64,000 bases of DNA, from the IMG/VR virus record IMGVR_UViG_3300035180_001778, positions 62,001 through 126,000 of that record; one strand, written 5' to 3'. A program made the position numbers and the translations under genes. The notes beneath the pieces are model-generated. The model was not told the DNA's origin. It saw only the letters and a program-made list of their open reading frames with translations, and made no database searches. Positions 5,052-37,172 of this stretch are shown piece after piece (position 1 is the stretch's first letter; each line of letters begins with the position of its first letter).

Positions 5052-6311
5052 TTACTCTGAGTCCATTTCCTTGAGGGCCGCCTCGATCGCGTCCATGTCG
5101 AGGTCCTGGATCTGCTTGGCGACCTTGGCCATGACGAACTTGGCGATCCCCTCGTCCACCTTGGCGTCCTCATCCGATGCGAGGAAGTGGTGAACATGCT
5201 TGTGAATGCCCTCCCCAATCTCGATGTACTCGCTGAGCCCGTCGATGTGTCCCAGGATGTCGGCTGCCGCTCGTGCTGCCAGGTTCTTGGTGAGGGTCTT
5301 TCCGAAGGCCCCTGCAAGAGCGAGAGGCCCACCACTGACTGTCAGAGCCGTTGCCGCAGCGGTGATGGCCATGTGCTTGGCCAATGTCTTGAAAGCGTGC
5401 TTCTGCTCGGGGGTCATCGAACCCCCCTTGATGACAGCCTTCACCCCGGCTGCCGCTTCCTTGTACTCCTTCACCTCGTTCTTCACGGTGGTGATGGCAT
5501 GCTGCACGACGTTGTGCGGGGCGTCCATCAGCTTCTTGTGGGCCCCCATGAGGGCCGTTCGACGATAGGCATCGTCGGTGAAGAACTGCTTGACGGCCGC
5601 GGGCGCATCCTCGTAGAACTTCTTCGCTTTGGCCCCGAGTCCTTGCAGGCGCTCCTTCCAGGACTTCTTGGGTGCATCATGCTCATGCTCCCCGCCACCC
5701 CCATGATCTTCCTTTTTGGTGACGGTGTGATTCGCAGGGTCGGCTTGAGGGTGCTCGTGCAGGTACTCTTTCATTTCCTCGGGCGATGAGTGCTCCATCG
5801 CAAGCTGCATCTGGAAACGAGCGACAACGCGGAGAAGTGTGCGGGATTGCGTCATGTGAGGCCTCGGTCGAAAAGTAGGGAGCATCAGTCGTCGGTCGTA
5901 GCGATCTCGCAGCTCTTTCCAATCGTTCCCCGAGGGGATCAACTGGGCCAGTTGCTTCGCTTCTTTTTCAGCGAGCTGCCAGGCATGCGGTCCCAACGTC
6001 GTCAGGATCTTGTTGGGGTCATGGGGCCATTTCTTCCGCATCATGTCCAAAATGGGGGTCTTCATCCAGACCTTCCCCAAATCACTGAGGTCGTAGATGA
6101 CGAACGCGCTCAGCTCGTTAATCTGAGCGTAATTGGCCATGCCCTTGTGGTAACTGGCCCCATCCGTTTCCTGAATCCCAGTGAACCCCGTGTCTTGGAG
6201 AGAGTGCAGGCACGCGAGGATCTTCGACATGGCCTGACGAAAATCCTCGGGCAAGGCTGAAGCCCAAGATGCTTGAAAGCTCCGCGCGACACGATAGACG
6301 ATGGGTAGCAT
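5052..6311 (-). CDS. RVA-leader protein(s); 419-aa ORF that may be two genes (second start ATG 5855)
   Basis: MLPIVYRVARSF at the start; MTQSRTLLRVVARF at 5855 preceded by GAGG; YLHEHPQADPANHTV motif. Confidence 0.7.
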   Translation of the reverse strand: MLPIVYRVARSFQASWASALPEDFRQAMSKILACLHSLQDTGFTGIQETDGASYHKGMANYAQINELSAFVIYDLSDLGKVWMKTPILDMMRKKWPHDPNKILTTLGPHAWQLAEKEAKQLAQLIPSGNDWKELRDRYDRRLMLPTFRPRPHMTQSRTLLRVVARFQMQLAMEHSSPEEMKEYLHEHPQADPANHTVTKKEDHGGGGEHEHDAPKKSWKERLQGLGAKAKKFYEDAPAAVKQFFTDDAYRRTALMGAHKKLMDAPHNVVQHAITTVKNEVKEYKEAAAGVKAVIKGGSMTPEQKHAFKTLAKHMAITAAATALTVSGGPLALAGAFGKTLTKNLAARAAADILGHIDGLSEYIEIGEGIHKHVHHFLASDEDAKVDEGIAKFVMAKVAKQIQDLDMDAIEAALKEMDSE

Positions 6312-7102
6312 CAGGCGTACTCGGTGGAAAGTCGGTCAAGGACGGTATCTTTGACGTCGCCGATGGCCCAGTAGGTCGCCTGGTTGTCTTCGTGGGGGGA
6401 ATGCACGTTGATCCCCATGTGGACCAGAGCTTCCTCAACCTTCGCGAGGTCCAACTCCCTCTTGAGGACCATACCCACGTTGTAGCCGATAGCTTGGCTC
6501 TGTGTGGATCGATGGGGGCTATCGTAGGGCTTGAACCCCAAAGGAATGGCCCCGTTCAACACATCAGAGATGGCCCGGTCCACCTTCGGCTTGACGTACT
6601 TGGCGTAGTACTCCTGAACGCCTGCATTGACCTTCTTTTGGAAGTCGCTGTCGTTCTGCTCGAAAAAGGTCTTGAGCCCAGACACGGTCTCATCGTAGAC
6701 CCGCTCCATCCTCTTTTCGAGGTCGTGGTACTCTTCGTGAGTGACCCGGTTGAGCTGGCCCTTCTTTTCGAGATGCACGATCATCGAAGCGAAGTGTCCC
6801 GAGGGACCATGGATCTTCAGGTCCCCCTCAGAGACCTGCCACATCGCCACGATCTTCTTCTCGGCATCGAACACCCACAGGTATCTCCAGGGGGTGTTGC
6901 TCGGGAGGTGAATGTAGCGAGCATGTCCCGTCCCCGGGCCGCCCTCATCGACCTTTTCCGAGACGTCCATCCCCTCTCCACGGAACGTGCTCAGCACGTA
7001 CTTCCGACCCCCAATGGTGGCCGTCGGGACCCCAGGTTTGGGTTTGAAGGGGATGACCACCGCTGCATAGCGGGTCGCAACACGATGGACGAGGTCACTC
7101 AC
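6311..7102 (-). CDS. RVA-leader hypothetical protein (263 aa)
   Basis: GTG start then SDLVHRVATRYAA; long GC3-rich ORF. Confidence 0.75.
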   Translation of the reverse strand: MSDLVHRVATRYAAVVIPFKPKPGVPTATIGGRKYVLSTFRGEGMDVSEKVDEGGPGTGHARYIHLPSNTPWRYLWVFDAEKKIVAMWQVSEGDLKIHGPSGHFASMIVHLEKKGQLNRVTHEEYHDLEKRMERVYDETVSGLKTFFEQNDSDFQKKVNAGVQEYYAKYVKPKVDRAISDVLNGAIPLGFKPYDSPHRSTQSQAIGYNVGMVLKRELDLAKVEEALVHMGINVHSPHEDNQATYWAIGDVKDTVLDRLSTEYA

Positions 7103-7129
7103 ACTGAGGGGAGGGCACAAGAGAAAATG

Positions 7130-7480
7130 CTACCGGGGGAGGGGATTCTTTTCCCGGTACTCCTTCGAGTGAAGGACCATCTCCAGGAACTCCTCGACCG
7201 ACATCTTGCGAATGTCGTGATCGTAGTTGATCGTTCGAGCGTCCCCGTACTCATGCCGCCCGCGGTCGTTGGGCAGGGTGAAGTACACAGACTGCGCCTT
7301 GAACCAGAGCTTGAACTTGCCGTCGGGTGAGGTCGCGTGGGGCACCTTGAGCCCTTCCGTGACCTTCCAACCCTTCGTCTTGAGGAAGGCGAATATCTCG
7401 GCTTGAGCTTGCGGGTAGGTGCGTTGCTTGGCTGCCGCTGCCTCCAAAAACCGAGCCACCACGCGCTTGTTCAGATCCAT
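7130..7480 (-). CDS. RVA-leader hypothetical protein (116 aa)
   Basis: MDLNKRVVARFLEAAA. Confidence 0.75.
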   Translation of the reverse strand: MDLNKRVVARFLEAAAAKQRTYPQAQAEIFAFLKTKGWKVTEGLKVPHATSPDGKFKLWFKAQSVYFTLPNDRGRHEYGDARTINYDHDIRKMSVEEFLEMVLHSKEYREKNPLPR

Positions 7481-7503
7481 GCCCACACCCCCCTACAAGA
7501 GGA

Positions 7504-7962
7504 TCAATCCTGTTTCACTTCGACATCCATGTCGCTCTCGAATGCACTGGCCAGTCGAGCGATGTCCCGAGAGATGTGATCCACTCGTTTCTTCTGACCA
7601 GCTCCGTAGGGGACCTTGAAGTGCGCTCCCAGAAAGTTGGTCGGGTCCGTGTAATTCCCCGCGTGCAGCGACCCAAGGAACTTCTTCAAGCTGGCGACGG
7701 GTTCGCAGTAGGTGACGGAACCCTCAACCCCATGCTCCTCGAAGAACTTCTTCAGGGAGTCCCGAACAGTTGCGGCCAATGCAGCCACCTGCTCCGGGAT
7801 CTCCGGATCGAACTGAGGGCGAGTAACCCCATTCCCCCCACCTGATGGGTCCTTACCCAAGGGTGTTTTTTGGTTCAAGATCACAGACGCCGTGATGTTG
7901 ACCTGAGCGTAGGGCTTGGCGCTGGAAGGCTTCCCGATACGGAAAATGCAGGTGGGCTTCAA
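7504..7962 (-). CDS. Hypothetical protein (152 aa)
   Basis: ORF in the co-oriented array; TTG start uncertain. Confidence 0.65.
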   Translation of the reverse strand: MKPTCIFRIGKPSSAKPYAQVNITASVILNQKTPLGKDPSGGGNGVTRPQFDPEIPEQVAALAATVRDSLKKFFEEHGVEGSVTYCEPVASLKKFLGSLHAGNYTDPTNFLGAHFKVPYGAGQKKRVDHISRDIARLASAFESDMDVEVKQD

Positions 7963-8036
7963 GCGAGACTCTTGAAACCTTCGGAAAACCTCAAATGCCA
8001 GACGATCCCTGCCACAGCCGCCATATCAAAGAACTC

Positions 8037-8756
8037 TCAGACTTCGACCGTCAGCTCGAAATTGAACTTGGGGTTCTCTTCTTTCCGCGCGTACCCGAAC
8101 GGGTTGCAGAGCACTCGGGTTTTCCCAAGCTGGTAGTCGAAGGACCCGTGGGTATGGCCGTGCATACAAATCGCAGGCTTCTTCGCGAGGATCAACTCCT
8201 CCATGTTGCAGACGAAGAACGAGTTGATCTCGGATCCCTTGTACTGCTCTGGAGTCGACCGCGGAGAAGGGAGATGATGGGTGACGACGATGTCCCCCTC
8301 TCGCACCTCCTTCTGGAAGAAGGCAAGGGTGGCTGCATTGTCCTGGTACACCCAGGACTCCAGCTCGGGGATGAGCTTGAAATCCCACATCTCATCCTTC
8401 GGGGCAATGGGGTCGTGACGAAACCACATCGTACCCCCAAGGAAGCGCTGCCCTCCGAGAACCACAGAGCTGTTGTCCAGCCAGTGGAAATTCTTGTGTC
8501 GGCCGGCGAAGTTGTGCAGCCGTTTGCGAAGCTCCCCACGAGTCATCCGGTAGTACTCGTGGTTTCCAGGGACGTAGACCACCTCCGTGTACTGGTGGCA
8601 GAGGAGACTCAGCGCCGGGATCAGCTCGGCTCCCACCGTAAGGTCTCCCGCCACAACGAGCACATCGCAACCATCGGGGAGGATGCTCTCCAGAAGAGAG
8701 CGTCCCGAGTCCCGTTGGAACTCGAAGTGAAGATCCGAGATGATGCCGACTTTCAT
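8037..8756 (-). CDS. Calcineurin-like metallophosphoesterase
   Basis: SDLH, AGDL, PGNHE, THH and HGHTH motifs. Confidence 0.92.
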   Translation of the reverse strand: MKVGIISDLHFEFQRDSGRSLLESILPDGCDVLVVAGDLTVGAELIPALSLLCHQYTEVVYVPGNHEYYRMTRGELRKRLHNFAGRHKNFHWLDNSSVVLGGQRFLGGTMWFRHDPIAPKDEMWDFKLIPELESWVYQDNAATLAFFQKEVREGDIVVTHHLPSPRSTPEQYKGSEINSFFVCNMEELILAKKPAICMHGHTHGSFDYQLGKTRVLCNPFGYARKEENPKFNFELTVEV

Positions 8757-8759
8757 GGG

Positions 8760-9029
8760 TCAGATATCGAAGACTGCGCCGGGTTCGTACGGGTCCCATC
8801 CCTTTGCAATGCCTTGCCGGATGGCATTGATAATGAGGGAGGGAGTCACACTCTCGATCACCATTGAGGTGCGGAGTATTTGTCCAGGCTTTTCCGTGTC
8901 AGCCTGGATCAAGATGAGCCGACCCCCCGCATGACGTTGGGGGTCGGTGTTGGTAGGGGTCTTCACCAGATAGCGATAGGCCCTACCCTCTACCTGAATA
9001 CGCCTGCTCTTCTTCTTGGGGAAGCTCAT
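8760..9029 (-). CDS. Small hypothetical protein, paralog of 9033-9329
   Basis: PKKKSRRIQVEGRAYRYLVK..TPSLI..AI..GWDP. Confidence 0.75.
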   Translation of the reverse strand: MSFPKKKSRRIQVEGRAYRYLVKTPTNTDPQRHAGGRLILIQADTEKPGQILRTSMVIESVTPSLIINAIRQGIAKGWDPYEPGAVFDI

Positions 9030-9032
9030 GGG

Positions 9033-9329
9033 TCACTCGTCGATCGAGTCGCCAACGTAGAAGGCGATACCCCTGGCGCTGGGGTCCCAGCCTCGCTTCA
9101 GCGCCTTCGGGATCATCTCCGCAACCAGGCGAGGCGTGATGACCCTGTAGTAGGACAGGCGGCGAAAAAGAACCCGACCGGGTTTCGGCGTCACCTCCTG
9201 GACGATCAGGACCAGCTCTTTCTGGTCTCGCTCCTCAAAGCGATGGGAAATCTTCACGAGGTAGCGGTAAGACTTCCCATCGACCACGATAGGGCGGCTT
9301 CCTTTTCGAGGGATGCCCATCTCGATCAC
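9033..9329 (-). CDS. Small hypothetical protein, paralog of 8760-9029
   Basis: PRKGSRPIVVDGKSYRYLVK..TPRLV..AL..GWDP. Confidence 0.75.
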   Translation of the reverse strand: MIEMGIPRKGSRPIVVDGKSYRYLVKISHRFEERDQKELVLIVQEVTPKPGRVLFRRLSYYRVITPRLVAEMIPKALKRGWDPSARGIAFYVGDSIDE

Positions 9330-10576
9330 CCCACCGCTTCTGCCGGGACATCCCGGCGGAGGATGACAGCTTGACCCTTCCCCATGGCCGCTTCCTCCGT
9401 GATCCGGATCGAGACGATCGTGGGGTCGCTCGGCGAGATGTAGGCGTACGGAGCCAGGATGCTCTCGACGACGGACCGAAGCCCGCGGGCTCCCGTCGGC
9501 CGCTTCTTGGCCTCCTTGGCGATGTGCCGGAGGGCAGCATCATCGAACTGGAGATCGATGCGGTCCATGTGGAAGAGGGCCTTGACCTGCTTGATGATGG
9601 CGTTGCGGGGCTCCGTGAGGATCTTCAACATCTCCTCTTCCGTCAGCTCGATCACCGTCGTGAGCACCGGGACGCGCCCCATCAGCTCGGGGATGATCCC
9701 GAAGCTGAGAATGTCGTCTTCCTTCACCTCCAGGTAGGTCTCCGTCTTGGAGAGCTTCTTCTTGTCCTCCGCTCCGAATCCAAGGCTCGACTTGTGGTTC
9801 ACCCGCTGCGAGATGATGTCCTCGATTCCGGCGAAGGACCCGGCGCAGATGAAGAGCACGTTGGTGGTGTCGAACGGGTCCGATTCCCCACCTGACGTGA
9901 CCATCTTGCCCTGCCCGCGGGGCACGTTGATCTTGTTCCCTTCGAGGAGCTTGAGGAGGCTCTGCTGAACGCCTTCCCCCGTGACGTCGCGATAGCCGGT
10001 CGACCCGCGGCCCGACTTCCTCGCCAGCTTGTCGAACTCGTCGATGAAAATGATCCCCCACTGAGCACGCTCGATGTCCCCGTTGGCATCCGCGATGAGC
10101 CCCTGAATCAAGCTCTCGACGTCATCCCCGACGTAGCCCGCTTGCGTCAGCTTGGTCGCGTCCGCGTTGAACATGGGCACGCCCAACATCCGGGCGAGGG
10201 TTCGAGCGATCTCGGTCTTGCCGCAACCGCTCGGGCCGATGACCATCATGTTGCTCTTCTGGATCTCGACCCCAAGATCCAGGTTTTGACGGACGGCATC
10301 CCGCCGCTTGTAGTGGTTGTAGACGGCCACCGCCATGTCCACCTTCGCCCGTTCCTGCCCGATGACGTACTGATCCAGGAAGGCCCGGATTTCCATGGGC
10401 TTGCGAAGGACTTCCTTCTTGTCGGCGTTCTTCTTCAGCTCCGCTTCGCCGAAGGCTCGACCGATCTGCCCCACACACTTGTCACAGATGAGGGCGCCCC
10501 CCTCAACCCCCGCGAGGGCTTTCACCTCATTGCGGGGTTTTCCACAGAACGAGCACTTGGCGATGTTTTGGGCCAT
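9326..10576 (-). CDS. clpX: ATP-dependent Clp protease ATP-binding subunit ClpX
   Basis: N-terminal C4 zinc finger (CSFC..CDKC), Walker A GPSGCGKT, GYVG pore loop, IFIDEFDK, RDVTGEGVQQSLLK, LGF loop, GARGLRS. Confidence 0.95.
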   Translation of the reverse strand: MAQNIAKCSFCGKPRNEVKALAGVEGGALICDKCVGQIGRAFGEAELKKNADKKEVLRKPMEIRAFLDQYVIGQERAKVDMAVAVYNHYKRRDAVRQNLDLGVEIQKSNMMVIGPSGCGKTEIARTLARMLGVPMFNADATKLTQAGYVGDDVESLIQGLIADANGDIERAQWGIIFIDEFDKLARKSGRGSTGYRDVTGEGVQQSLLKLLEGNKINVPRGQGKMVTSGGESDPFDTTNVLFICAGSFAGIEDIISQRVNHKSSLGFGAEDKKKLSKTETYLEVKEDDILSFGIIPELMGRVPVLTTVIELTEEEMLKILTEPRNAIIKQVKALFHMDRIDLQFDDAALRHIAKEAKKRPTGARGLRSVVESILAPYAYISPSDPTIVSIRITEEAAMGKGQAVILRRDVPAEAVG

Positions 10577-10586
10577 GTTGATCTAG

Positions 10587-10592
10587 TACACC
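10587..10592 (-). promoter_or_regulatory. GGTGTA element 10 nt upstream of clpX ATG
   Basis: TACACC on + at 10587-10592, ATG at 10576. Confidence 0.6.
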
Positions 10593-10593
10593 A

Positions 10594-10623
10594 CAAAAGC
10601 CCAAAATGCCGAATCATTTTGGG
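10594..10623 (-). terminator. Intrinsic terminator
   Basis: 9-bp stem CCCAAAATG/CATTTTGGG with a 6-nt loop, followed on - by CTTTTGT, just after the 10625 stop. Confidence 0.65.
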
Positions 10624-10624
10624 G

Positions 10625-10957
10625 TCAGTCGACGTACTTCCGGTTCGCGATCATGTCCGCGAGCAGCGGGCCCATGGCGTCGTCAAAGAAGACCCGGACG
10701 ACGCCTTTGTAAACGGCACGCTTCACCGCTTCCTCTGTGACCTGGACTCCGTCCATCTCGACACTCTTCTCGGCTTCTGCAAGAGCAGCTCGGAAGAAGT
10801 CCGAAATTGCCTGTCCCTGTTTGATGTACTCTCGAAGGTAGGCCTCGATTTCCTTCTTCACAGACTTACCGTCGTGTTTCTGGTCCAACACGTTGTCGAT
10901 CACCCAGTCGACAGCCGAGGTAGGGTCAGACGCGCGACGATCGTAGGAGTAGCTCAT
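10625..10957 (-). CDS. Hypothetical protein with MSYSYDRRA leader (110 aa)
   Basis: ORF with ATGA overlap; helical. Confidence 0.75.
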   Translation of the reverse strand: MSYSYDRRASDPTSAVDWVIDNVLDQKHDGKSVKKEIEAYLREYIKQGQAISDFFRAALAEAEKSVEMDGVQVTEEAVKRAVYKGVVRVFFDDAMGPLLADMIANRKYVD

Positions 10958-11555
10958 GCCGGGATCTCCGCGTTTTTCTTGATCAGAGCCCGCTGAACGG
11001 ACTCACAAGACCTGCAACGACGCTGTACACCATAGGGTAGGCCATCGTACCGTCGATACTCCGAGCACTTTTTCGGTGTCTTACATTTACTGCAAGCCTT
11101 CACAGCACTCGGGTCGTACACCCCAAGCCATTTGGTACGCGTACGAGCATGGTGCGCTTGAGCTTCGGCCCGTTCACGTACCACAGTCTGAATTGGATCT
11201 TGTGCTCCAACTTTGTTGAGGGTTGGTATTTGGCGATTGCGTCCATTTCGTACTTCCTGGCATCCCCATCACTCGCTACCAACCAAACCTTCAAAAGAAG
11301 GCCTTGCTCTCGCACAGCTTGACCAATTCTCCGATCATGCTTGCATGTGGTTTGATTCGGTTCCCGGCGGTATTGCAGAATTCGACGCCAAACCCCAACC
11401 CCATTTGAATGTACCGCACACCCCGACCCAATGTAGCTAGGGCTTCCCGTTTTGGGATCGTAAAAACAGTAGACGCCGATACCTTCGGGTATCGATTTGC
11501 GTCCAAAATCAATCGCCCACATGTTCAACCCTTCTGCGTCAGGCGTGGTCAACAT
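10954..11555 (-). mobile_element. GIY-YIG endonuclease with C-terminal zinc-ribbon, frameshifted near 11220
   Basis: GVYCF..YIGSG..RRI..E..I..YQP, then in the -1 frame LNKVG..CSKC..CRSC; lower GC than flanks; 602+1 nt = 201 codons. Confidence 0.7.
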
Positions 11556-11587
11556 GAGATCGGTTACAGGTAGTGCAGGAAGCATCT

Positions 11588-12361
11588 TCAGGTAGGAATA
11601 TCGCAGTAAACAACGCAGTCCTGGAGCCAGTGCCCCTTGAGGCCGTCGCAGTGGACCTTCCCCGAGGGCTCGATGACGCAGATGCCGCCCTCGCCGAAGT
11701 CGTTCGGGACCTCTTTGCCGTAACGGTTCGCGACGATGAGCCAGGTGTTGTTGTCCTTCGCGAAGTCCCACCACGTCGTTGAAGGGAAGCCCCCGTTGCC
11801 CCAGTTGGCCGAGAAGCACACGACGTCAGCATCCCCCGATTCGTAGAAGTCGGTCCACTTGTCGTCCTTCTTGTTTCGGACGTCTCGGCAGATGAGAAGC
11901 CCGACCCGAAGCGTGGTGGAAGGCTCTCCAATCCCTGCCTCGAACTTCGCTCGGATGACGGGTGGATTCCCCTTCCCCTCGTGCGCCCAGAGGATGTCGT
12001 TCCCCCACAGGTTGACCTTGCGATAGGACTCGAAGTAGCCCGTGGGGTCGATGTAGACCTGGCTGTTGTAGAGCTTGTTGGTGCCCACCTCGCGCTCGAC
12101 CATTCCCCAGACGAGGTGGACGTTGTAGGCGGACGCGAGCGCGTGCATCGCCTTCATCGTCAGGCTGTTGAGGGATATCTCCTCAGCCACGGGGATGGCA
12201 TCCTCCTCGCCCATGAAGCTGTACCCCGTGGTGACCAGCTCCGGGAGAACGATGAGCCGGGCCCCGTTCTCCGCCGCGTGGAGAACGAGCCTGGCGACTT
12301 TGCGGAGATTTCCGAGCTTGTCCCCATACGTGGGGGCGAATTGAACAGCGGCGACCTTCAT
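11588..12361 (-). CDS. Carbon-nitrogen hydrolase (nitrilase superfamily)
   Basis: MKVAAVQ, LPEL (Glu), YRK (Lys), LICRD (Cys) catalytic triad, ANRYG. Confidence 0.9.
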   Translation of the reverse strand: MKVAAVQFAPTYGDKLGNLRKVARLVLHAAENGARLIVLPELVTTGYSFMGEEDAIPVAEEISLNSLTMKAMHALASAYNVHLVWGMVEREVGTNKLYNSQVYIDPTGYFESYRKVNLWGNDILWAHEGKGNPPVIRAKFEAGIGEPSTTLRVGLLICRDVRNKKDDKWTDFYESGDADVVCFSANWGNGGFPSTTWWDFAKDNNTWLIVANRYGKEVPNDFGEGGICVIEPSGKVHCDGLKGHWLQDCVVYCDIPT

Positions 12362-12390
12362 ACCAGAGGCCCCGATATGAGAAGAAACCG

Positions 12391-12956
12391 CTACTCTGCC
12401 TGAGCCCCTTTGGGGGACTCGTCGTTCTTGAGGGTCACCTTGAAAAGGGACGAGGAAGCCGTGTGGAAGATGACCACGCCTTCGGGGTCCATGTAGCCAG
12501 GAGCTGCCTGGCTCCCCTTCTCGCGAAGAAGGGTCAGAGCGTTCTCCGTGACGACTCGGATGTCCGTGCCGCGCCCGAGAACGGGAACGACGTGGCAGCA
12601 CTTCGGGCGAACCGCATCGTCACCCCAGATCGCGGTGTTGAAGAGGGAGAAGCGCTTCTCCTTGAGACCGTAGCCTCGACCGAGACCCGAGCCCCACCAC
12701 TCTCCGTTGTGACGCCCGGGGCCGAGCTTGAGGACCTCTTCCCGGTTCTCCTCGATCCAGCGGGCGAAGCCCTTGTAGTCGTCCTTGTAGGAGATGTACT
12801 TCGTGCGGGAGTTGACCCGGTAGGTCTGGAAGTCGTCGGCGATGGTGATCCCGACGTTGGCCCCGTCGAGCTTCTCCGTGGCGACACACTCGCGGTTCAA
12901 CCGGCTGATTTTTGGAAGGGATCGAAAGCGGTCTGGAGAAGTTCTTGAGCGTCCAT
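12391..12956 (-). CDS. RNA ligase-like nucleotidyltransferase (Rnl2-type), apparent -1 frameshift at A5 run 12909-12913
   Basis: TEKLDGAN (motif I), NSR, GEWWG, RFSLF, PEGVVI; true start inferred at ATG 12956 (GGTGTA-N10-ATG); 566+1 nt = 189 codons. Confidence 0.75.
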
Positions 12957-12965
12957 GTGGACTCT

Positions 12966-13355
12966 TTACACCGAGAACTGGTCCTCCCAGCTCTTGATCT
13001 TGGTCCCGCGGTACATGCGCTGGTTCCCCGGCTTGGGTTCCGCGTGCATCGTCAGCGTGTTCATGGGTCCCGAGCGGCCCCCAGGGAGCTTCACCACGTA
13101 GGTCTTCCCCTGGCACTCGATGACGCCCCGACCGCCCGCCAAGAGCGCACCGAAGACCGCTCGGGGCGTCCCGAGGTCGGCCCGGAACCGGATGAACGTA
13201 GAGGTTCCGACGCTCATCGTGTCGAGGCTTTCCAACCTCCGGAAGAGCACCTGTGCTGTCTTGGAGGCCATCATCACCGCTTTTGCCACGTCATGCGACG
13301 TCTCATAGCGCGTGGACTGAACTGCGAAGTATGTCGAGAGGTCGATATCATCCAT
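12966..13355 (-). CDS. Hypothetical protein (129 aa)
   Basis: ORF; start at MDDIDL. Confidence 0.7.
   Translation of the reverse strand: MDDIDLSTYFAVQSTRYETSHDVAKAVMMASKTAQVLFRRLESLDTMSVGTSTFIRFRADLGTPRAVFGALLAGGRGVIECQGKTYVVKLPGGRSGPMNTLTMHAEPKPGNQRMYRGTKIKSWEDQFSV
12967..12972 (-). promoter_or_regulatory. GGTGTA element 10 nt upstream of RNA ligase ATG
   Basis: 15-nt GGACTCTTTACACCG identical to 23994-24008. Confidence 0.6.
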
Positions 13356-14619
13356 TGAGGATCGCTTCAATCAAAGGGATTTGAACTTTGGGCAGCTTGC
13401 CCAGTGCGTAGTAAGACACCATCTCACAGAAGTTTTCGTCGGGGTCCGTTGCGGCGTATTGCGTCACAAACCCCTTGAATTCTTCCGGGGGGACAACTTG
13501 AATGTTGTTGACCCGACACCAAGCATCAATCTTCATCGAGAGCAAGGACTTGGGGTCGTCTGCGATGGCCAGATTCACCTTCGACTTCATGAAGTCGACA
13601 CCCGTGACGACCAAGTTCTCCCCCTTGAACACCAATTTATCCCCTGCGTTGGGGTAAAGGGCCAAGGGGATCTGAATGTCATTTTGGTGGTTCTGAACTG
13701 TCCGAAAAAGGTTCCGGATCTCAGCCTTTTTCGAGGCTAGGAACTTGTGAATGAGCCGGTGCGTCAGCTCGTGACAGACGGTCTGAACCGTATCCCACCC
13801 AGGCCGAATATTGGCCCTGACGAACATCTCGTCATTCTTGATGAGATAGAACGCCATGATGCGAGAGCTTTGGCTGATGGTCTTCGTGACCAGTATGTCC
13901 CCGTAGCACACCTTTGCAAGTCCGATCTCACGGAGAGCCCGCTCAGCTTTGGCGACGACCTCTTTGTTGGTGGCCATCACCTTCTCGTCGAAGTTGCCTG
14001 TGTTGACCAGCGTGAAACTACCCACAGGGATCCGGGTAGTCGCTGCGACATCAGGGTCACTGTGAAGCTTCGCCGTGGCAAGGACTTTCTCCCCAAGTAC
14101 CACTTGAGCGTTTAGAAGGTCCATCACCTCAACATAGGCATCGAGGTACTCGATCCACGCCGCCCACCCGAACTTGTAATCGCTCTTGAGACGAACCGTT
14201 GTACGGGTCTTATCCCAGAATCGAGTGGCTGCTTCTACCCCCTTTGAAAGGGCAGGGAGGATTGCGTACTGTTGTAGGAGAGAGAAGAAGAGAGAGGTCG
14301 CCAAAGGCTTGGCTCTCTTGTACCAATTCCCCATGCCCATCGTAGACACGATGTCTCGGATGCCTTTAGCGTAAGGCTCCAGATTGGGGGGCATGGGGGC
14401 TCTGTATCTGTCTCGGTCCTCGTTGAGGGGCAACTTGTCAAGCGCCTCCCGCAACAAGGTCGAAGACGTCATGGCAAAGTCTCCGTTTTCAGCGAATAGA
14501 GAGACCCATTTTTTGAACTGAGCCAGGAGTTCAACCGGATCGCCAATGGCGTCAGCCATGAATCGACGGTAAACCCTACGGGCGATGTTCGTAGCGTTGG
14601 ACGCGAAGTCGGGGGTCAT
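13348..14619 (-). CDS. RVA-type-leader protein with C-terminal zincin metallopeptidase motif
   Basis: IARRVYRRFMA leader; CHELTH (HExxH) and downstream YAATDPDENFCE; start at 14619 or 14631. Confidence 0.7.
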   Translation of the reverse strand: MTPDFASNATNIARRVYRRFMADAIGDPVELLAQFKKWVSLFAENGDFAMTSSTLLREALDKLPLNEDRDRYRAPMPPNLEPYAKGIRDIVSTMGMGNWYKRAKPLATSLFFSLLQQYAILPALSKGVEAATRFWDKTRTTVRLKSDYKFGWAAWIEYLDAYVEVMDLLNAQVVLGEKVLATAKLHSDPDVAATTRIPVGSFTLVNTGNFDEKVMATNKEVVAKAERALREIGLAKVCYGDILVTKTISQSSRIMAFYLIKNDEMFVRANIRPGWDTVQTVCHELTHRLIHKFLASKKAEIRNLFRTVQNHQNDIQIPLALYPNAGDKLVFKGENLVVTGVDFMKSKVNLAIADDPKSLLSMKIDAWCRVNNIQVVPPEEFKGFVTQYAATDPDENFCEMVSYYALGKLPKVQIPLIEAILNG

Positions 14620-18804: not shown

Positions 18805-19665
18805 TCAAGTACTCCTGTAGTTCTTTTGGTAGTTGCCCGCGTAAGAGGGCGTCTTCTTGTGACACGAAATGCAGAGCGTTCGACCGTTGGTCAAGTCCCA
18901 GAGGGCGGGACAGTTGAACGCATCTTCGAGGGTCTTGATACGATGCTCGTCGAGGAGTCCCGCAAGAGGTTTAATGTGGTCCGCCTGTAGTTGACCCCCA
19001 ACTTGACCACATCCCTGGCAAGTATAGGCGTCCCTCTTGAAGACATCCTTTCGCCATCGGATAGCCGGTTCGGAGTTCCGAATCAGAGCTGAGAGGCGAG
19101 TTTTCCCGCCCTTCCAGTTGGACCCCTTCTCCCCTAGAAAACGACCTCGGTTGGCTTGAGCTATTTTCTGCTTGATCTCGGAGCTATGCTCACGCCCAAA
19201 GAAGGGATTCTTCTCCCCCACTCGTTGGGAGGCGCTCTCCGAGAGAGCTTGGCGAACCTCCAGTCGTTGCATTGCAGCTTTTTGAGCTGCCACAAAGTCT
19301 GGTGTGTGTCGTATAGAATTCAGCCTTGTGTGTGCGGCTTCCTTCACCTCTTCTGTATGCGTTCTCCCATACATGGGATTTCGGATCCCCGAAGTTGAGG
19401 CACTTCGGCGGGCCTTTACCTCGGGATCCTTATTTGTGACTTGAAGGGTCTCTGAGGTTTTCCGCCGGGTCGCGTCTGACTTCGTCTTCCCGTGCATGGG
19501 GTTTTTGTCCCCAGAGAGCGCCTCGGATTTCGTTCGCCTTGGAATTCCGTAGCGCGCCATGTGGTAGCGGATCGTGCTTGCGGACTCACCACAAAGAGAA
19601 GCGATCTGCCGAAGGGACAGCAGATCGCCAAGGTACTTCTGTCGGAGGAACTCTTCAGTTACCAC
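18805..19665 (-). mobile_element. Free-standing HNH endonuclease with NUMOD3-like repeats and N-terminal HTH
   Basis: Repeated NP(M/F)(H/Y/F)G(K/R)..S/T motifs; RDAYTCQGCG..ADHIKP..NGRTLCISCH. Confidence 0.85.
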
Positions 19666-19689: not shown

Positions 19690-20817
19690 TCAGACTGCAA
19701 CTTTGAAGTTGATGGCCGGGTGCGGATTGTATCCTTCCAAGCGGAAGAGACCCATGATTTCCTCTGTAGTGACCGAGGGATCCATCAGGCGTTCGATATC
19801 GCTGAGATCCTTGATGCTGTCATCGATGATGAGACGAGGAAGAGGACGAGGCTCTCTGGTAAGTTGCTCGCGAGCCCCAGGGGTGTGGTCGTATTCGGCC
19901 ATAGACCCATCGGGCTTGGCACAGTAGATGTGCATGTCGACCACGGAATGCCCAAAAATCCCAGGCTTGATCCCCGTAAACCTGCTGAAAAGCTCGATGA
20001 GAAGAGCGTAGCTGGCAAGGTTGTACGGTGCGCCAAGCATTACATCCAGCGATCTTTGGGTCAAATGAAGACAGAGGCGACGCGGGTCGTCCCCCACAGG
20101 AGGATTCTTGAAGACATCCCCCCCACGCGCTCCGTTGAGAATGACCTGGCAGTCAGGGCACCACGCCTCCCTGTACTTCATCCCTTCCCCGTGCGGAAGA
20201 ACCCGTCGGCCGTCCTTGTAGTTGCCGCACACGGGGTCCTCTCCCCTGTTGTGCCCGTAATGCACGTACCTCGGCGTCGGGTCCTCGTTCTGCACGTTGA
20301 ACACGTAGAGGCAGTGGCAGGGCGGGAGCTTGCTCGTCTGAGCGTTCTGGGGAGCCCAAGCCGAGACGACCATCCGCCGGCTCATGGGGTTCTTGCGCAT
20401 CTCGGCGAGCACCCAGGCGATCTGGTCGTTGAAGGTTGCCCAGACGCCCTGGGGGAGCTGAAAGCCGCCAGGGGTGTTTTCGAACATCGTCTGATTGTAT
20501 GTGTGAACCGGGAAGTTGCGCCAGAAGTTCCCATAGGCGCTCGGGACCTTGCCCGTGACGGGGTCGGCCCATGCGTCCCAGAACTTGCACCCGTGGCGCT
20601 TGAGGATCGCGATGTCCGTCTGGCCCGATAGGAACCACAACATTTCAACAACGATATGAACCCAGTTGACCTTTTTCGTCGTGAGAAGGGGGAAGCCCTC
20701 ACTCAAGTCGACCTCGTAGTAATACCCAAATGTGCTCAACGTATCCACACCAGTACGGTTTTCCTTCCTGGTCCCGTTGCTGAGCACATGGTTCACCGCG
20801 TCGAGGTATTGCTTCAC
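19690..20817 (-). CDS. thyA: Thymidylate synthase with a 70-aa insertion
   Basis: NRTGVDT, FPLLTTKK, EMLWFLSG, LPPCH, QRSLD..LGAPYN, DMHIY; GTG at 20817 with GTGA overlap. Confidence 0.95.
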   Translation of the reverse strand: MKQYLDAVNHVLSNGTRKENRTGVDTLSTFGYYYEVDLSEGFPLLTTKKVNWVHIVVEMLWFLSGQTDIAILKRHGCKFWDAWADPVTGKVPSAYGNFWRNFPVHTYNQTMFENTPGGFQLPQGVWATFNDQIAWVLAEMRKNPMSRRMVVSAWAPQNAQTSKLPPCHCLYVFNVQNEDPTPRYVHYGHNRGEDPVCGNYKDGRRVLPHGEGMKYREAWCPDCQVILNGARGGDVFKNPPVGDDPRRLCLHLTQRSLDVMLGAPYNLASYALLIELFSRFTGIKPGIFGHSVVDMHIYCAKPDGSMAEYDHTPGAREQLTREPRPLPRLIIDDSIKDLSDIERLMDPSVTTEEIMGLFRLEGYNPHPAINFKVAV

Positions 20818-20984
20818 GATTCCATTCTTTCGCGTTCGTGAGGGCACATTCCGTAGAATCCGCGTGCCATGTTGCAGTTGTGGCAGAGAACCCGGAATCC
20901 TCCCGGGAGCCCTTGCCAGTAATTGAAAGAAGATCCACTTCGGACCTTGTCTTTCTTCCTTTGCTGGTTCCGGCGTCTTCTCAT
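20814..20984 (-). pseudogene. C-terminal remnant of a small HNH-type endonuclease (56 aa)
   Basis: MRRRR..GLPGGFRVLCHNCNMARGFYGMCPH; lacks the N-terminal Cys and DH half; below the 60-aa cut-off of the ORF track. Confidence 0.55.
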
Positions 20985-35505: not shown

Positions 35506-35796
35506 ATGCTGAACATCACCAACGAAACGGGCTGGGTTCTAGTCGATGACAACTTCGTCCAGTTGACCGACAACGGTCAAGACGGCGAATTTCGAGTTCG
35601 GATTATCATGGGGGAAGGAGTGTGGGGCTCCAAGAGGAGCAGCACCTTCCGTGAAGACATGGTCCTCTTCTTCAAGGACACTGCGGAAAGTATGCTGGAA
35701 GGGTGGGATCCTGTGATTCACCCCCAGTGGGAGTTCCTCGGAAAGGGTGACCCCAAGCTCCTCGCGTTCGTCCGCGAGTGCATCATTGAGTCCTAG
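35506..35796 (+). CDS. Hypothetical protein (96 aa)
   Basis: Shares TGTAGGACCCCCATG with the 34975 gene. Confidence 0.75.
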   Translation: MLNITNETGWVLVDDNFVQLTDNGQDGEFRVRIIMGEGVWGSKRSSTFREDMVLFFKDTAESMLEGWDPVIHPQWEFLGKGDPKLLAFVRECIIES

Positions 35797-37172
35797 AGCA
35801 GGTTGCCGGGTCCGATGGCGGGCCCGATGATGCGAAGGAAGCCGGTGAAGAGGGTTCGCGCTGCGGACGCTTGACCGGCTTCTTGCATCAGAGCCACACC
35901 AAAGGCCGCCGTCTCGTAGACAGCGAAGCTGATCTCATCCGAGACCTGCCCTCCGAAGTCCTGCACGACATCGTCGGGAGGGTTCTTGGTGGCGATCGAC
36001 TTGAGGGTAGACTCGGCGAAAGAGGACGCCTCGCTGTAGTTCGCCTGGTCGAGAGCGTACGAAACAACCAGCGCAGCCACGCCGGGATCCTTGATCTGGC
36101 CGTAGAGCGTCTTCGCGAACGGAATCTGGTCCTTCACCATCTGGAGGAAGGTGTCCTTCGCCGTCGGGGTCTTCCCTTTCTCTTCAGGAGGCCCGGCCAT
36201 GTCGATCGAGGACTTGAGCGCGTCCCTCAAGATGACGTTGGCTCGCTGAGCCTTGGTCGGCTGCTTGGAGCGCTGGAGAAGCGAGATCCCAACGGCTGCC
36301 GCCTGAACCTTCCCCTTGTCCCCATGGTCAAGGTGGGGCGTGATTCGCCAGACGAGCTTGTTGATCGCAGCTCCGACATCGAGCCCCGCGGAGGAATCGA
36401 GGAGATTCCAGAGCTTGTCCGCAACGGCCTTCCCAGCCTTTTCCTCCATGAGGAAGTACAAGACCCCGCCGCAGATGCTCTTGATGTCCCCCTTCTTGAA
36501 GGTGTCGGCCGCTGCCATCTTCTTCGCGGCGAGGAGGATCTCTTTCACGAGGTTCTCCTTCGAGCCGAGCATGTCCGGGAGCCACACCCCTCTGTCATCG
36601 GCTGTGACAATTGAAGGGTCCATAAACCGAGCTGCAACGCGAAGAACGAGATCCGAGTACATGTCTACTCCGTTGGAGAATACAGAGCTGTTGTGCCACT
36701 TGTTGAAGGTGGTGATGAGGTCCACGGTGCCAGGTCCGATGGTGGCGAACACGATCTTGAGCCCCGTTTTCGGGTTCACCCATTCGATCTTGTCCCCTGA
36801 GCCGAGCGTCGAGAGCATCCGCTCGTAGGCAGGGCTCTTCAACGCTTTCCAGTTGTTGAGCTGTGTCACGAAGTGTTTGAGGACATCCTGGACATCCTGG
36901 ACAGACACCCCTCGGAGATCCATCCGGTATTGGGCGTGCGCTGTGATCTGGATCCGCTTGATCAGGCCGATCCCAGGCTCGATGTCCAGGTGATAGACCT
37001 TCGAGGCGTCAGCGTTCGAGAGGTCCTCCCCCTGCTGAACCTCGTCAACGAGGTCATGCTGAAGATGGGGGTTTTGCACCCTTTGAAGGATGCGCTGCAC
37101 GACTGACGAGGGCCCCCCGGGCTTCCCGAGAGGCGGATTCAAGTCCGCCTGATGTGAGCCCTCGTTACTCAT
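35793..37172 (-). CDS. Hypothetical virion-type protein(s); internal RVA-leader start at ATG 36662
   Basis: ADLNPPLG..HAQYRMDLRG module followed by GGAG-N5-ATG MYSDLVLRVAARF. Confidence 0.7.
   Translation of the reverse strand: MSNEGSHQADLNPPLGKPGGPSSVVQRILQRVQNPHLQHDLVDEVQQGEDLSNADASKVYHLDIEPGIGLIKRIQITAHAQYRMDLRGVSVQDVQDVLKHFVTQLNNWKALKSPAYERMLSTLGSGDKIEWVNPKTGLKIVFATIGPGTVDLITTFNKWHNSSVFSNGVDMYSDLVLRVAARFMDPSIVTADDRGVWLPDMLGSKENLVKEILLAAKKMAAADTFKKGDIKSICGGVLYFLMEEKAGKAVADKLWNLLDSSAGLDVGAAINKLVWRITPHLDHGDKGKVQAAAVGISLLQRSKQPTKAQRANVILRDALKSSIDMAGPPEEKGKTPTAKDTFLQMVKDQIPFAKTLYGQIKDPGVAALVVSYALDQANYSEASSFAESTLKSIATKNPPDDVVQDFGGQVSDEISFAVYETAAFGVALMQEAGQASAARTLFTGFLRIIGPAIGPGNLL

What the first reader, a model, noticed from the sequence alone, without database searches (positions are those of the whole stretch)
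5052..14619. Shared N-terminal R-V-x-x-R-[FY] leader on unrelated proteins: candidate capsid-targeting or maturation tag
Seen: MLPIVYRVARSFQA (6311), MTQSRTLLRVVARFQMQLA (5855), VSDLVHRVATRYAA (7102), MDLNKRVVARFLEAAA (7480), ..NIARRVYRRFMA (14619) and MYSDLVLRVAARFMD (36662); the first copy has S in place of the second R. A possibly related leader is MSYSYDRRA (10957). The bodies behind the leaders look unrelated, and none of these genes has the GGTGTA-N10 promoter. Knowledge: T4 internal proteins carry a short N-terminal capsid-targeting sequence removed by the prohead protease. Inference: this motif is a modular tag that loads cargo into the head for injection, possibly cleaved at the Ala that follows.
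Basis: partly seen in the sequence, partly recalled or inferred. Interest (0 to 1): 0.8.

Follow-up and report, generated by a model that had tools for sequence, protein, structure and literature searches.

The report
Shared docking helix on huge-phage effectors
A 350-kb phage and many distant relatives put the same short helical tag (…L-A-x-R-V-x-x-R-F/Y-L…) on otherwise unrelated, rapidly swapped enzyme genes that cluster around the phage's own ClpX unfoldase. The tag is therefore a real, apparently undescribed protein address, but its receptor (ClpX or the virion) is not yet known.

Summary
R-V-x-x-R-[FY] occurs 5 times in the window's coding frames against 0.36 expected, always at a true or potential protein start. 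Codons differ synonymously.

The tag is kept at the extreme N-terminus in 62 of 93 homologues (30-42% identity) of the zincin-like peptidase D. MSYSYDRR replaces it on some of those same bodies.

The tag is not strictly N-terminal. It also sits in flexible inter-domain linkers and near C-termini, sometimes in tandem. AlphaFold models show an isolated helix of lower confidence.

Tagged genes account for four of the five or so gaps in synteny with an 81-95% identical relative. Their bodies are effector-like: zincin peptidase, RelE/DUF4258-like RNase fold, ART-like fold, and in relatives topoisomerase IB, methyltransferase and DnaJ.

New finding: in 28 diverged huge-phage loci the tag clusters tightly around a phage ClpX that keeps its zinc-finger N-domain. 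In 10 of 28 the gene directly after ClpX carries it.

Best reading (about 0.4): a ClpX-docking tag. Cleavage after Ala is unsupported.

The parts
6270..6311 (-). Leader copy A1 (MLPIVYRVARSFQA; Ser in place of the second Arg)
5856..6311 (-). A1 module (152 aa). It is absent from relative L005 and is fused in frame to A2. It ends in …RYDRRLMLP…, the only other YDRR in the window.
5799..5855 (-). Leader copy A2 (MTQSRTLLRVVARFQMQLA). It is internal here and a true N-terminus in L005.
5052..5855 (-). A2 protein body (267 aa, no family match)
6311..7102 (-). Gene B (263 aa from the GTG at 7102). The leader VSDLVHRVATRYAA is at 7061-7102. No family match.
7130..7480 (-). Gene C (116 aa). The leader MDLNKRVVARFLEAAA is at 7433-7480. 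It is absent from L005, and no homologue was found in a search limited to its first 40 residues.
7975..8010 (-). Variant leader (…DRLAFEVFRRF) ahead of gene 7504-7962. The start codon (ATG in L005) is AGG at 8008-8010. Synonymous differences from L005 suggest the stretch is still constrained.
13348..14619 (-). Gene D (423 aa), a zincin-like metallopeptidase (HExxH plus ENFxE) with an SH3/Tudor-like insert. The leader is at 14554-14619. It is absent at this site in L005.
36618..36662 (-). Internal leader E (MYSDLVLRVAARFMD), in a low-confidence linker between two domains. A GGAG lies 5 nt upstream of its ATG.
35793..37172 (-). ORF E (459 aa). It consists of a RelE/HigB/DUF4258-like domain (36663-37172), the leader, and an all-helical body.
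10625..10957 (-). Gene F (110 aa) with the alternative leader MSYSYDRRA (10931-10957). In L005 this region is replaced by a 370-aa gene with an RV leader.
9326..10576 (-). Phage ClpX with a C4 zinc-finger N-domain, GYVG pore loop and LGFG (ClpP-docking) loop. This is the gene around which tagged genes cluster.

Best explanation
The leader is a position-independent docking peptide of about 14 residues. Its consensus is [DS]-P-L-A-x-R-V-[AV]-x-R-[FY]-[LQ]-x-x-x-A. It is predicted to be a short amphipathic helix set in flexible sequence.

It marks a fast-turning-over set of effector-type proteins in a broad clade of huge phages. The most likely receptor is the zinc-finger N-domain of the phage's own ClpX. 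The tag would tether the proteins to this AAA+ unfoldase in the way the SspB XB tail (…PALRVVK) and the UmuD N-terminal motif tether their proteins to E. coli ClpX. That would make the tagged proteins clients of ClpX, either substrates or adaptors.

Shown:
- The tag exists and is under protein-level conservation.
- It is modular.
- It lies in a flexible context.
- Tagged genes behave as exchangeable cassettes.
- Tagged genes cluster around ClpX.

Inferred:
- Physical binding to ClpX.
- The outcome of binding. This could be timed degradation through ClpP, since the [LM]GFG loop is kept, or unfolding and translocation for loading into the virion.
For: Clustering around ClpX:
- In 28 non-redundant loci anchored on phage ClpX (52-65% identical to the window's, GC 43-69%), a 13-column leader matrix gives 61 hits, all on the ClpX strand. 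The 905 kb scanned in that call gave 3 hits on reversed sequences.
- In 10 of 28 loci the gene starting right after the ClpX stop carries the tag.
- Hit density falls from 2.4 per kb per locus (0-150 nt) to 0.24-0.48 (out to 3 kb) and 0.05 (4.5-6 kb).
- Within 3 kb of ClpX the density is about 0.32 per kb. It is about 0.04-0.05 per kb in D-anchored loci without ClpX and in the rest of this genome.
- In the window, A1, A2, B, C, the variant copy, D and F all lie within 5 kb of ClpX.
- D sits directly next to ClpX in five distinct diverged relatives.

State of ClpX: all aligned phage ClpX keep the CxxC…CxxC N-domain, GYVG and [LM]GFG.

Resemblance to known ClpX tethers:
- The known N-domain ligand is RGGRPALRVVK (PMC3983244).
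- Several leaders read …ALRV[AV]….

Properties expected of a tethering motif:
- The tag occurs at N-termini, in linkers and at C-termini.
- It occurs in tandem pairs.
- It lies in low-pLDDT segments.
Against: - No binding test was possible.
- The invariant positions of the tag (R0, V+1, R+4, F/Y+5) are not those I recall as critical in XB. R+4 and F+5 have no counterpart there.
- AlphaFold predicts a helix, whereas XB binds in extended form (from memory).
- Of about 12 D-bearing contigs over 300 kb, six showed no ClpX of this clade. That scan depends on two exact peptide patterns, so absence is not proven.
- One tagged gene lies in the tail module and three lie beside head-fibre genes, far from any ClpX that was seen.
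- Clustering could simply reflect a hypervariable island that happens to flank ClpX.
Confidence: 0.4

Rival explanations
1. Virion (capsid or tail lumen) targeting peptide, independent of ClpX. The helix binds a prohead core, shell or tail-assembly component, so that tagged effectors are packaged and ejected with the DNA. This would work like the T4 capsid-targeting sequence, encapsulin cargo-loading peptides or microcompartment encapsulation peptides. It is the first reader's idea without the obligatory cleavage.
For: - Tagged genes are the variable cassettes between near-identical genomes, as T4 internal-protein genes are.
- The bodies are the enzyme classes described as packaged early-phase effectors (PMC5512222): zincin peptidase, RelE/DUF4258-like BECR-type RNase fold, topoisomerase IB, methyltransferase and SNF2.
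- A tagged gene whose body resembles ADP-ribosyltransferases lies inside the tail/baseplate module. Its ATG overlaps the upstream stop. T4 Alt is the parallel.
- In L014, three tagged genes sit among head-fibre (gp80-domain) genes.
- Position independence and a flexible linker are also typical of encapsulation peptides.
Against: - No tagged protein is a recognised capsid, scaffold, portal or protease.
- The 47 kb of tail-module sequence read contains only one tagged gene: window 38-64 kb plus 24 kb upstream.
- Most tagged genes lie among replication and nucleotide-metabolism genes, next to ClpX.
- No conserved cleavage motif follows the tag.
- The ART assignment rests on ESM Atlas similarity only (TM 0.5-0.55). 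Pfam and PDB sequence searches are silent.
Confidence: 0.25
2. Docking or assembly motif for some other common partner. Candidates are a host hub protein, a phage compartment or replication factory, a membrane surface, or the leaders binding one another to co-assemble the tagged proteins.
For: - The pattern is an amphipathic helix: hydrophobic at -3, +1 and +5, Arg at 0 and +4, with a frequent D/S-P N-cap.
- Tandem double-leader mini-proteins exist (P0127, P0129) that are little more than two tags.
- Tagged proteins are functionally heterogeneous.
Against: - Nothing points to a specific alternative partner.
- The strict invariance of R-V…R-[FY] argues against generic membrane binding.
- This reading does not explain the clustering around ClpX.
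Confidence: 0.2
3. Processing site. The motif marks where a protease cuts precursors and multi-domain proteins into modules. Candidates are the conserved tagged zincin D or a prohead protease, for example cutting R↓[FY], which would expose a Phe/Tyr N-end.
For: - The motif sits at domain junctions in flexible linkers.
- The most conserved tagged protein is itself a zincin peptidase, and such peptidases are proposed to process polyvalent proteins (PMC5512222).
- N-terminal copies place the R-[FY] bond 9-13 residues from Met.
Against: - C-terminal copies 11-30 residues from the stop are conserved among homologues. Cutting there serves no obvious purpose.
- The i, i+1, i+4, i+5 spacing, the helix N-cap and the helix predictions fit a docking helix better than an extended protease site.
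- Tandem copies fit a docking helix better.
Confidence: 0.1
4. No protein function. The shared sequence is a recombination scar, a translation-start element, or chance.
For: The boundary of the A1 insertion lies inside a leader, so leaders may serve as recombination sites.
Against: - Codons vary synonymously.
- The tag is conserved at 30-40% identity in 62 of 93 homologues.
- Internal copies are conserved perfectly while the flanks diverge.
- Observed count is 5 against 0.36 expected, and 50 hits against 1 in reversed controls.
Confidence: 0.05

Closest known systems
ClpX N-domain tethering motifs (SspB XB tail RGGRPALRVVK; UmuD N-terminal motif)
   Same: - A short peptide in a flexible tail, placed at either end of otherwise unrelated proteins.
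- Multivalency helps binding.
- The local sequence A-L-R-V-V resembles many leaders.
- A ClpX with a zinc-finger N-domain is encoded in the middle of the tagged genes.
   Different: - The leader's invariant residues extend to R+4 and F/Y+5, and the Leu before Arg is not conserved.
- The leader is predicted helical.
- The tagged proteins are many and are phage effectors, not one adaptor.
- Binding is untested.
T4 capsid-targeting sequence on internal proteins IPI-III and Alt
   Same: - A leader of about 10 residues shared by unrelated proteins.
- The genes lie in hypervariable cassettes.
- The cargo includes host-modifying enzymes, here possibly an ART as in Alt.
   Different: - There is no sequence resemblance and no Leu/Ile-x-Glu cleavage motif (the T4 consensus is from memory).
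- The tag also occurs internally and at C-termini.
- Packaging has not been demonstrated.
Encapsulation peptides of bacterial microcompartments and cargo-loading peptides of encapsulins
   Same: - A short peptide joined by a poorly conserved linker, an amphipathic helix in microcompartments.
- It occurs at the N- or C-terminus or between domains, on unrelated enzymes, and binds one shell component.
   Different: - Different sequence.
- The compartment here would be a phage capsid.
- No shell partner has been identified.
Polyvalent proteins and MuF-fused effectors of phages (Iyer et al. 2017, PMC5512222)
   Same: - The same domain repertoire: zincin peptidase, BECR-type RNase, ART, SNF2, methyltransferase.
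- Modular shuffling.
   Different: - Here the modules are mostly separate genes or two-domain proteins, each carrying a common short tag.
- No MuF or portal fusion is present, and no such tag is described in that paper.
Pre-toxin junction motifs of polymorphic toxins (for example VENN in CdiA)
   Same: A short conserved motif marks the start of exchangeable C-terminal modules and may guide recombination. The A1 insertion boundary lies in the leader.
   Different: - Different sequence and a different delivery system.
- The tag here is mostly at the extreme N-terminus of free-standing genes.

Membership tests
ClpX N-domain (ZBD) tethering motif | A ClpX with the C4 zinc-finger N-domain is available to bind the motif | tested here: met
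   PF06689 hit at residues 7-37. CxxC…CxxC is invariant in six phage ClpX.
ClpX N-domain (ZBD) tethering motif | Sequence conforms to the XB consensus (…A-L-R-V-V-K at a chain end) | tested here: inconclusive
   A(-2), R0 and V+1 match, and +2 is often V. The Leu at -1 is variable, and R+4 and F/Y+5 have no XB counterpart.
ClpX N-domain (ZBD) tethering motif | Peptide physically binds the N-domain and enhances ClpXP action | not testable with these tools
   No complex prediction or assay was available. Only genomic linkage is shown.
ClpX N-domain (ZBD) tethering motif | Co-occurrence of motif and ClpX across genomes | tested here: inconclusive
   27 of 28 loci of this ClpX clade carry the tag. 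Of about 12 large D-bearing contigs, six showed no ClpX in a pattern-limited scan.
T4-type capsid-targeting sequence | Short N-terminal sequence shared by unrelated proteins | tested here: met
T4-type capsid-targeting sequence | Ends in a conserved prohead-protease cleavage motif and is removed | tested here: not met
   No common motif follows the tag. Internal and C-terminal copies exist. Actual processing was not testable.
T4-type capsid-targeting sequence | Tagged proteins are present in the virion | not testable with these tools
   The clade has no cultured member: no match in 50,697 phage records beyond one unannotated metagenomic record.
T4-type capsid-targeting sequence | Genes occupy hypervariable cassette loci | tested here: met
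   Four of the five or so gaps in 17 kb of synteny with L005 involve tagged genes.
Polyvalent-protein / packaged early-effector repertoire | Domains are zincin MPTase, BECR RNase, ART, SNF2, MTase and similar | tested here: met
   - Zincin.
- DUF4258/RelE-like.
- ART-like (lead only).
- Topoisomerase IB, MTase, SNF2.
Polyvalent-protein / packaged early-effector repertoire | Many (2-15) domains in one polypeptide, often with MuF or portal fusion or virion gene context | tested here: not met
   Most tagged proteins are single-domain or two-domain. No MuF or portal fusion was seen. Only 1 of about 10 tagged genes of this genome lies in a virion module.

The most novel reading that the evidence does not exclude
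Huge phages of this clade run their own protein-addressing system. A phage-encoded ClpX reads a dedicated helical tag on a changing arsenal of effectors. It then either destroys them on schedule or unfolds and threads them for loading into the virion. The second outcome would be the first AAA+-driven cargo-packaging route in a phage, an idea floated for phage ClpA/ClpX in PMC7824862. The alternative YSYDRR leader would be a second address in the same system.
Probability: 0.3. Interest if true: 0.9.

Novelty: new variant of a known kind. Interest (0 to 1): 0.75.

Why it matters
- Short shared address tags are how cells and viruses sort proteins. Very few are known for phages; the T4 capsid-targeting sequence is the textbook case.
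- This tag is conserved across dozens of uncultured huge-phage lineages with GC from 43 to 69%. It marks exactly the genes that turn over fastest, and it is linked to a phage-encoded unfoldase.
- If the receptor is ClpX, this would be a virus-owned degron or tether code, and a handle for finding huge-phage effectors by sequence alone.
- If the receptor is the virion, it is a portable packaging signal usable for loading foreign proteins.
- Either way, a 14-residue motif now flags candidate anti-host effectors in genomes where more than 80% of genes are unannotated.

Tried and rejected
- Pfam and PHROGs on the tagged bodies gave essentially nothing apart from D.
- ESM Atlas on B gave nothing.
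- A megablast and a tblastn against cultured or deposited phages gave no informative relative.
- A 40-residue region search with gene C found only itself.
- A 16-position leader HMM was run against 1.84 billion proteins. Single copies cannot reach significance. Of 8 hits, 6 were tandem-repeat artefacts and 2 were real double-leader mini-proteins.
- Literature searches for the motif strings and for a jumbo-phage capsid-targeting sequence found no description.
- Walking 24 kb upstream of the window looking for the head module found only tail genes. The head genes of this genome were never seen, so the question 'do capsid or protease genes carry the tag' remains open.
- A DNA-level element was considered and rejected because of the synonymous codon variation.
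- An N-degron or strictly N-terminal signal was considered and rejected because internal and C-terminal copies are conserved.
- GGTGTA as a promoter of the tagged genes was considered. It is absent from them, and it lies 10-13 nt from the ATG of other genes, so it looks like a start-proximal signal rather than a classical promoter.

Full report
**What the window is.** The 64-kb window is positions 62,001-126,000 of a 350,469-bp metagenomic contig (IMG/VR UViG_3300035180_001778, also JGI Ga0373631_0000004). It is a huge myovirus-type phage with about 59% GC and almost all genes on the minus strand. Recognisable genes include:
- PolA, DnaB, SNF2, ThyA, DHFR, an RNA ligase, a C-N hydrolase and Baseplate_J;
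- at 9326-10576, a ClpX with its C4 zinc-finger N-domain.

No cultured relative exists.

- Every quoted peptide is there.
- In a six-frame scan, the strict pattern RV..R[FY] occurs five times in real coding frames, against 0.36 expected from shuffling each ORF (0 of 2000 shuffles reach 5).
- All five lie 5-14 residues after an in-frame start codon. RVARSF at 6293 is a sixth.
- The codons for the conserved residues differ (CGT/CGC/AGG, GTC/GTT/GTG, TTT/TTC/TAT), so the constraint is on the peptide.
- The bodies behind the leaders share no BLASTP similarity.
- Apart from D, the bodies match no Pfam or PHROG family.

**The tag is old and conserved.**
- Protein D (13348-14619) has 93 homologues of 30-42% identity on contigs up to 490 kb. 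Of these, 62 carry [RKQ]-[VI]-x-x-R-[FYW] within the first 20 residues, typically as M-x(3-5)-R-V-x-x-R-[FY]-L-x-A-D.
- Seven homologues instead start with …Y-S-Y-D-R-R…, the same alternative leader as window gene 10625-10957. The two leaders are therefore interchangeable on one body.
- A few homologues have two leaders in tandem.
- From about 100 distinct copies the consensus is [DS]-P-L-A-x-R-V-[AV]-[ARS]-R-[FY]-[LQ]-x-x-x-A.
- The pattern is Leu at -3, Val at +1 and Phe/Tyr at +5 on one helical face, Arg at 0 and +4 beside it, with a frequent Asp/Ser-Pro cap.

**The tag is not strictly N-terminal.** ORF 35793-37172 consists of three parts:
- a RelE/HigB/DUF4258-like domain;
- the leader;
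- a helical body.

The internal leader LVLRVAARF is identical in homologues that are only 42-54% identical overall. In other relatives the leader precedes that domain, lies between two domains, or sits 11-30 residues from the C-terminus. The C-terminal copies include three topoisomerase-IB proteins that all end in the motif, and they recur in unrelated loci.

AlphaFold models were built for D (pLDDT 93.6) and E (84.7).
- In D the leader is an isolated helix, residues 6-20, at pLDDT 71-77 and followed by a loop.
- In E it is a helix at residues 174-184 inside a linker (residues 160-193) with pLDDT below 50.

This is the anatomy of a short docking motif, not of a signal peptide.

**Tagged genes are the cassettes that change.** The window was compared with a relative of 81-95% DNA identity over 17 kb (L005). 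Four of the five or so gaps in synteny involve tagged genes:
- gene D (window only);
- gene C (window only);
- the 152-aa A1 module (window only);
- a swap of F plus two small genes for a 370-aa gene starting MIAARVVARY.

The homology break of the A1 insertion falls at 5843/5844, inside the A2 leader. In L005, A2 is a free-standing gene beginning with the leader. The neighbour gene 7504-7962 begins MDRLALEVFRRFQE in L005. In the window its ATG is AGG, yet the leader codons differ only synonymously plus one conservative change.

**More copies in the same genome.**
- Just below the window lie a 335-aa gene with MAPASSKVAQRY at the N-terminus and …AQKVLARYTQAAMLDDGED at the C-terminus.
- Next to it is a 625-aa gene starting MSLSSRVVSRFLG.
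- In the tail/baseplate module lies an ORF, between a tape-measure-like 1145-aa gene plus a 215-aa virion protein and a tube-initiator-like 555-aa gene. Its ATG overlaps the upstream TGA (ATGA) and it begins MTMAITDRVAKRFW. Gene callers had started it 41 codons later.
- The body of that ORF resembles ADP-ribosyltransferases in the ESM Atlas (DRAT, NarE, ART, MuF-portal-ART fusions; TM 0.5-0.55). It contains R / S-T / E-x-E-like motifs, but Pfam and PDB sequence searches are silent. This is a lead, not a finding.
- Its codon usage is atypical for the genome.

**What the tagged proteins are.**
- D is a zincin-like metallopeptidase (invariant HExxH and ENFxE) with a small β-domain. Its nearest models are uncharacterised proteins of jumbo phages Motura and PaBG.
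- Among 24 tagged proteins from relatives, Pfam finds zinc metallopeptidases, DnaJ domains, topoisomerase IB, a DUF6094 methyltransferase and an SNF2 helicase with an intein.
- Together with the RelE-like domain and the ART-like body, this is the repertoire described for phage 'polyvalent' early-phase effectors (PMC5512222).

**The new contextual signal is ClpX.**
- A tblastn of window proteins against the D-anchored loci showed ClpX (55-61% identical) directly beside D in five distinct diverged phages. Other tagged genes fill the gap between the C-N hydrolase and ClpX.
- An IMG/VR scan with a ClpX alignment returned 77 loci.
- The 28 non-redundant loci of the window's ClpX clade (52-65% identity, GC 43-69%) gave 61 matrix hits of at least 14 bits. 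Reversed-sequence controls gave 3 hits in the whole 905 kb scanned.
- All 61 hits are on the ClpX strand, and 27 of 28 loci have at least one.
- In 10 loci the gene that starts immediately after the ClpX stop carries the tag.
- Hit density decays with distance from ClpX: 2.4 per kb per locus in the first 150 nt, 0.24-0.48 out to 3 kb, and 0.05 at 4.5-6 kb.
- About 45 loci of other phage ClpX clades (38-48% identity, GC 26-47%) gave one marginal hit.
- All aligned ClpX of the clade keep the zinc finger, the GYVG pore loop and the [LM]GFG ClpP-docking loop.
- The classical ligand of the ClpX N-domain, the SspB XB peptide, is RGGRPALRVVK (PMC3983244). Many leaders read …ALRV[AV]….

**Interpretation.** The data establish a modular docking tag that can sit at either end of a protein or between domains. 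Two receptors are plausible.

The genome-context evidence favours the ClpX N-domain. The tagged proteins would then be clients of a phage-controlled unfoldase. They might be degraded on schedule with ClpP, which would make sense for RNase-type and ADP-ribosylating effectors. Alternatively they might be unfolded for another purpose.

- cassette behaviour;
- effector repertoire;
- one tagged gene in the tail module;
- three tagged genes beside head-fibre genes in L014.

It has no direct evidence, and its 'cleaved N-terminal presequence' form does not fit the internal and C-terminal copies. The two readings can be combined: ClpX as translocase for packaged proteins, as suggested for phage ClpA/ClpX in PMC7824862.

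My weights are:
- ClpX docking 0.4;
- ClpX-independent virion targeting 0.25;
- another hub or self-assembly 0.2;
- processing site 0.1;
- no function 0.05.

**Limits.**
- I saw only about 97 kb of the 350-kb genome and never its head module.
- Co-occurrence of tag and ClpX across whole genomes could not be settled. Six of about 12 large D-bearing contigs showed no ClpX in a pattern-limited scan.
- The matrix is trained on Arg-rich, high-GC sequences and may miss Lys-rich versions.
- No complex prediction was available.

Noticed in passing
window minus strand: 34480, 32701, 31976, 24007, 21000, 18468, 17495, 17000, 16512, 12972, 10592, 5040: GGTGTA lies 10-13 nt upstream of the ATG of 12 replication or housekeeping genes, ClpX included, and of none of the tagged genes. 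At that distance it looks like a start-proximal signal (a -10-like box for leaderless mRNAs, or a non-Shine-Dalgarno ribosome signal) rather than a distant promoter.
   Followed up: partly
window 8756, 9029, 54040 (minus strand starts): A recurrent stop-start junction TGACCCATG occurs between consecutive genes. Most genes lack a Shine-Dalgarno sequence.
   Followed up: no
window 8008-8010: The start codon of gene 7504-7962 is AGG here but ATG in relative L005. The downstream leader codons still differ mostly synonymously, so the gene may start at a non-canonical codon (CTG at 7999-8001), or the site may be an assembly or sequence variant.
   Followed up: partly
window 12966-13370: A gene of about 134 aa follows D here and in L006 and L008, and it recurs in the DHFR / C-N hydrolase / ClpX block of seven relatives. 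In L005 it is present without D.
   Followed up: partly
window 8760-9029 and 9033-9329: Two small tandem paralogues (89 and 98 aa, …G[RK][AS]YRYLVK…) lie directly downstream of ClpX and carry no leader. The DNA of this stretch does not match L005.
   Followed up: no
window 19690-20847 and 18805-19665: The thymidylate synthase ORF is long (385 aa) and matches Pfam in two stretches. It is followed by a NUMOD3/HNH homing-endonuclease gene, so there may be an insertion or mobile element in or beside thyA.
   Followed up: no
L013 10645-11247 (contig about 138.7-139.3 kb): The ART-like tagged gene in the tail module has a much lower GC3 (0.48-0.61) than the other tagged genes checked (0.70-0.81). 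This suggests recent acquisition of the body onto a resident leader.
   Followed up: partly
L014 15940-16953: A phage contig (GC 63%) with three adjacent tagged genes also encodes a full-length Volactin-type actin homologue (PF25216, E 2e-70). It also has a 45-aa ORF starting MHDYDRRK next to the tagged genes.
   Followed up: no
P0076; L018 6963-11143; L028/L029/L037/L044: A D-like peptidase is fused to a HAD domain of 'Swiss Army Knife' RNA-repair proteins in one relative. E- and D-family genes sit directly beside SNF2 helicase genes in several relatives.
   Followed up: no
L053/L085 about 7640-9925: The ClpX of one relative is matched in two pieces about 1 kb apart, suggesting an intein or inserted element in clpX.
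   Followed up: no
L021-L024: D homologues occur on contigs binned into MAGs labelled Omnitrophota, Verrucomicrobiota, Lysinibacter and Planctomycetota. These are probably phage contigs mis-binned into the MAGs, so the host of the clade remains unknown.
   Followed up: no
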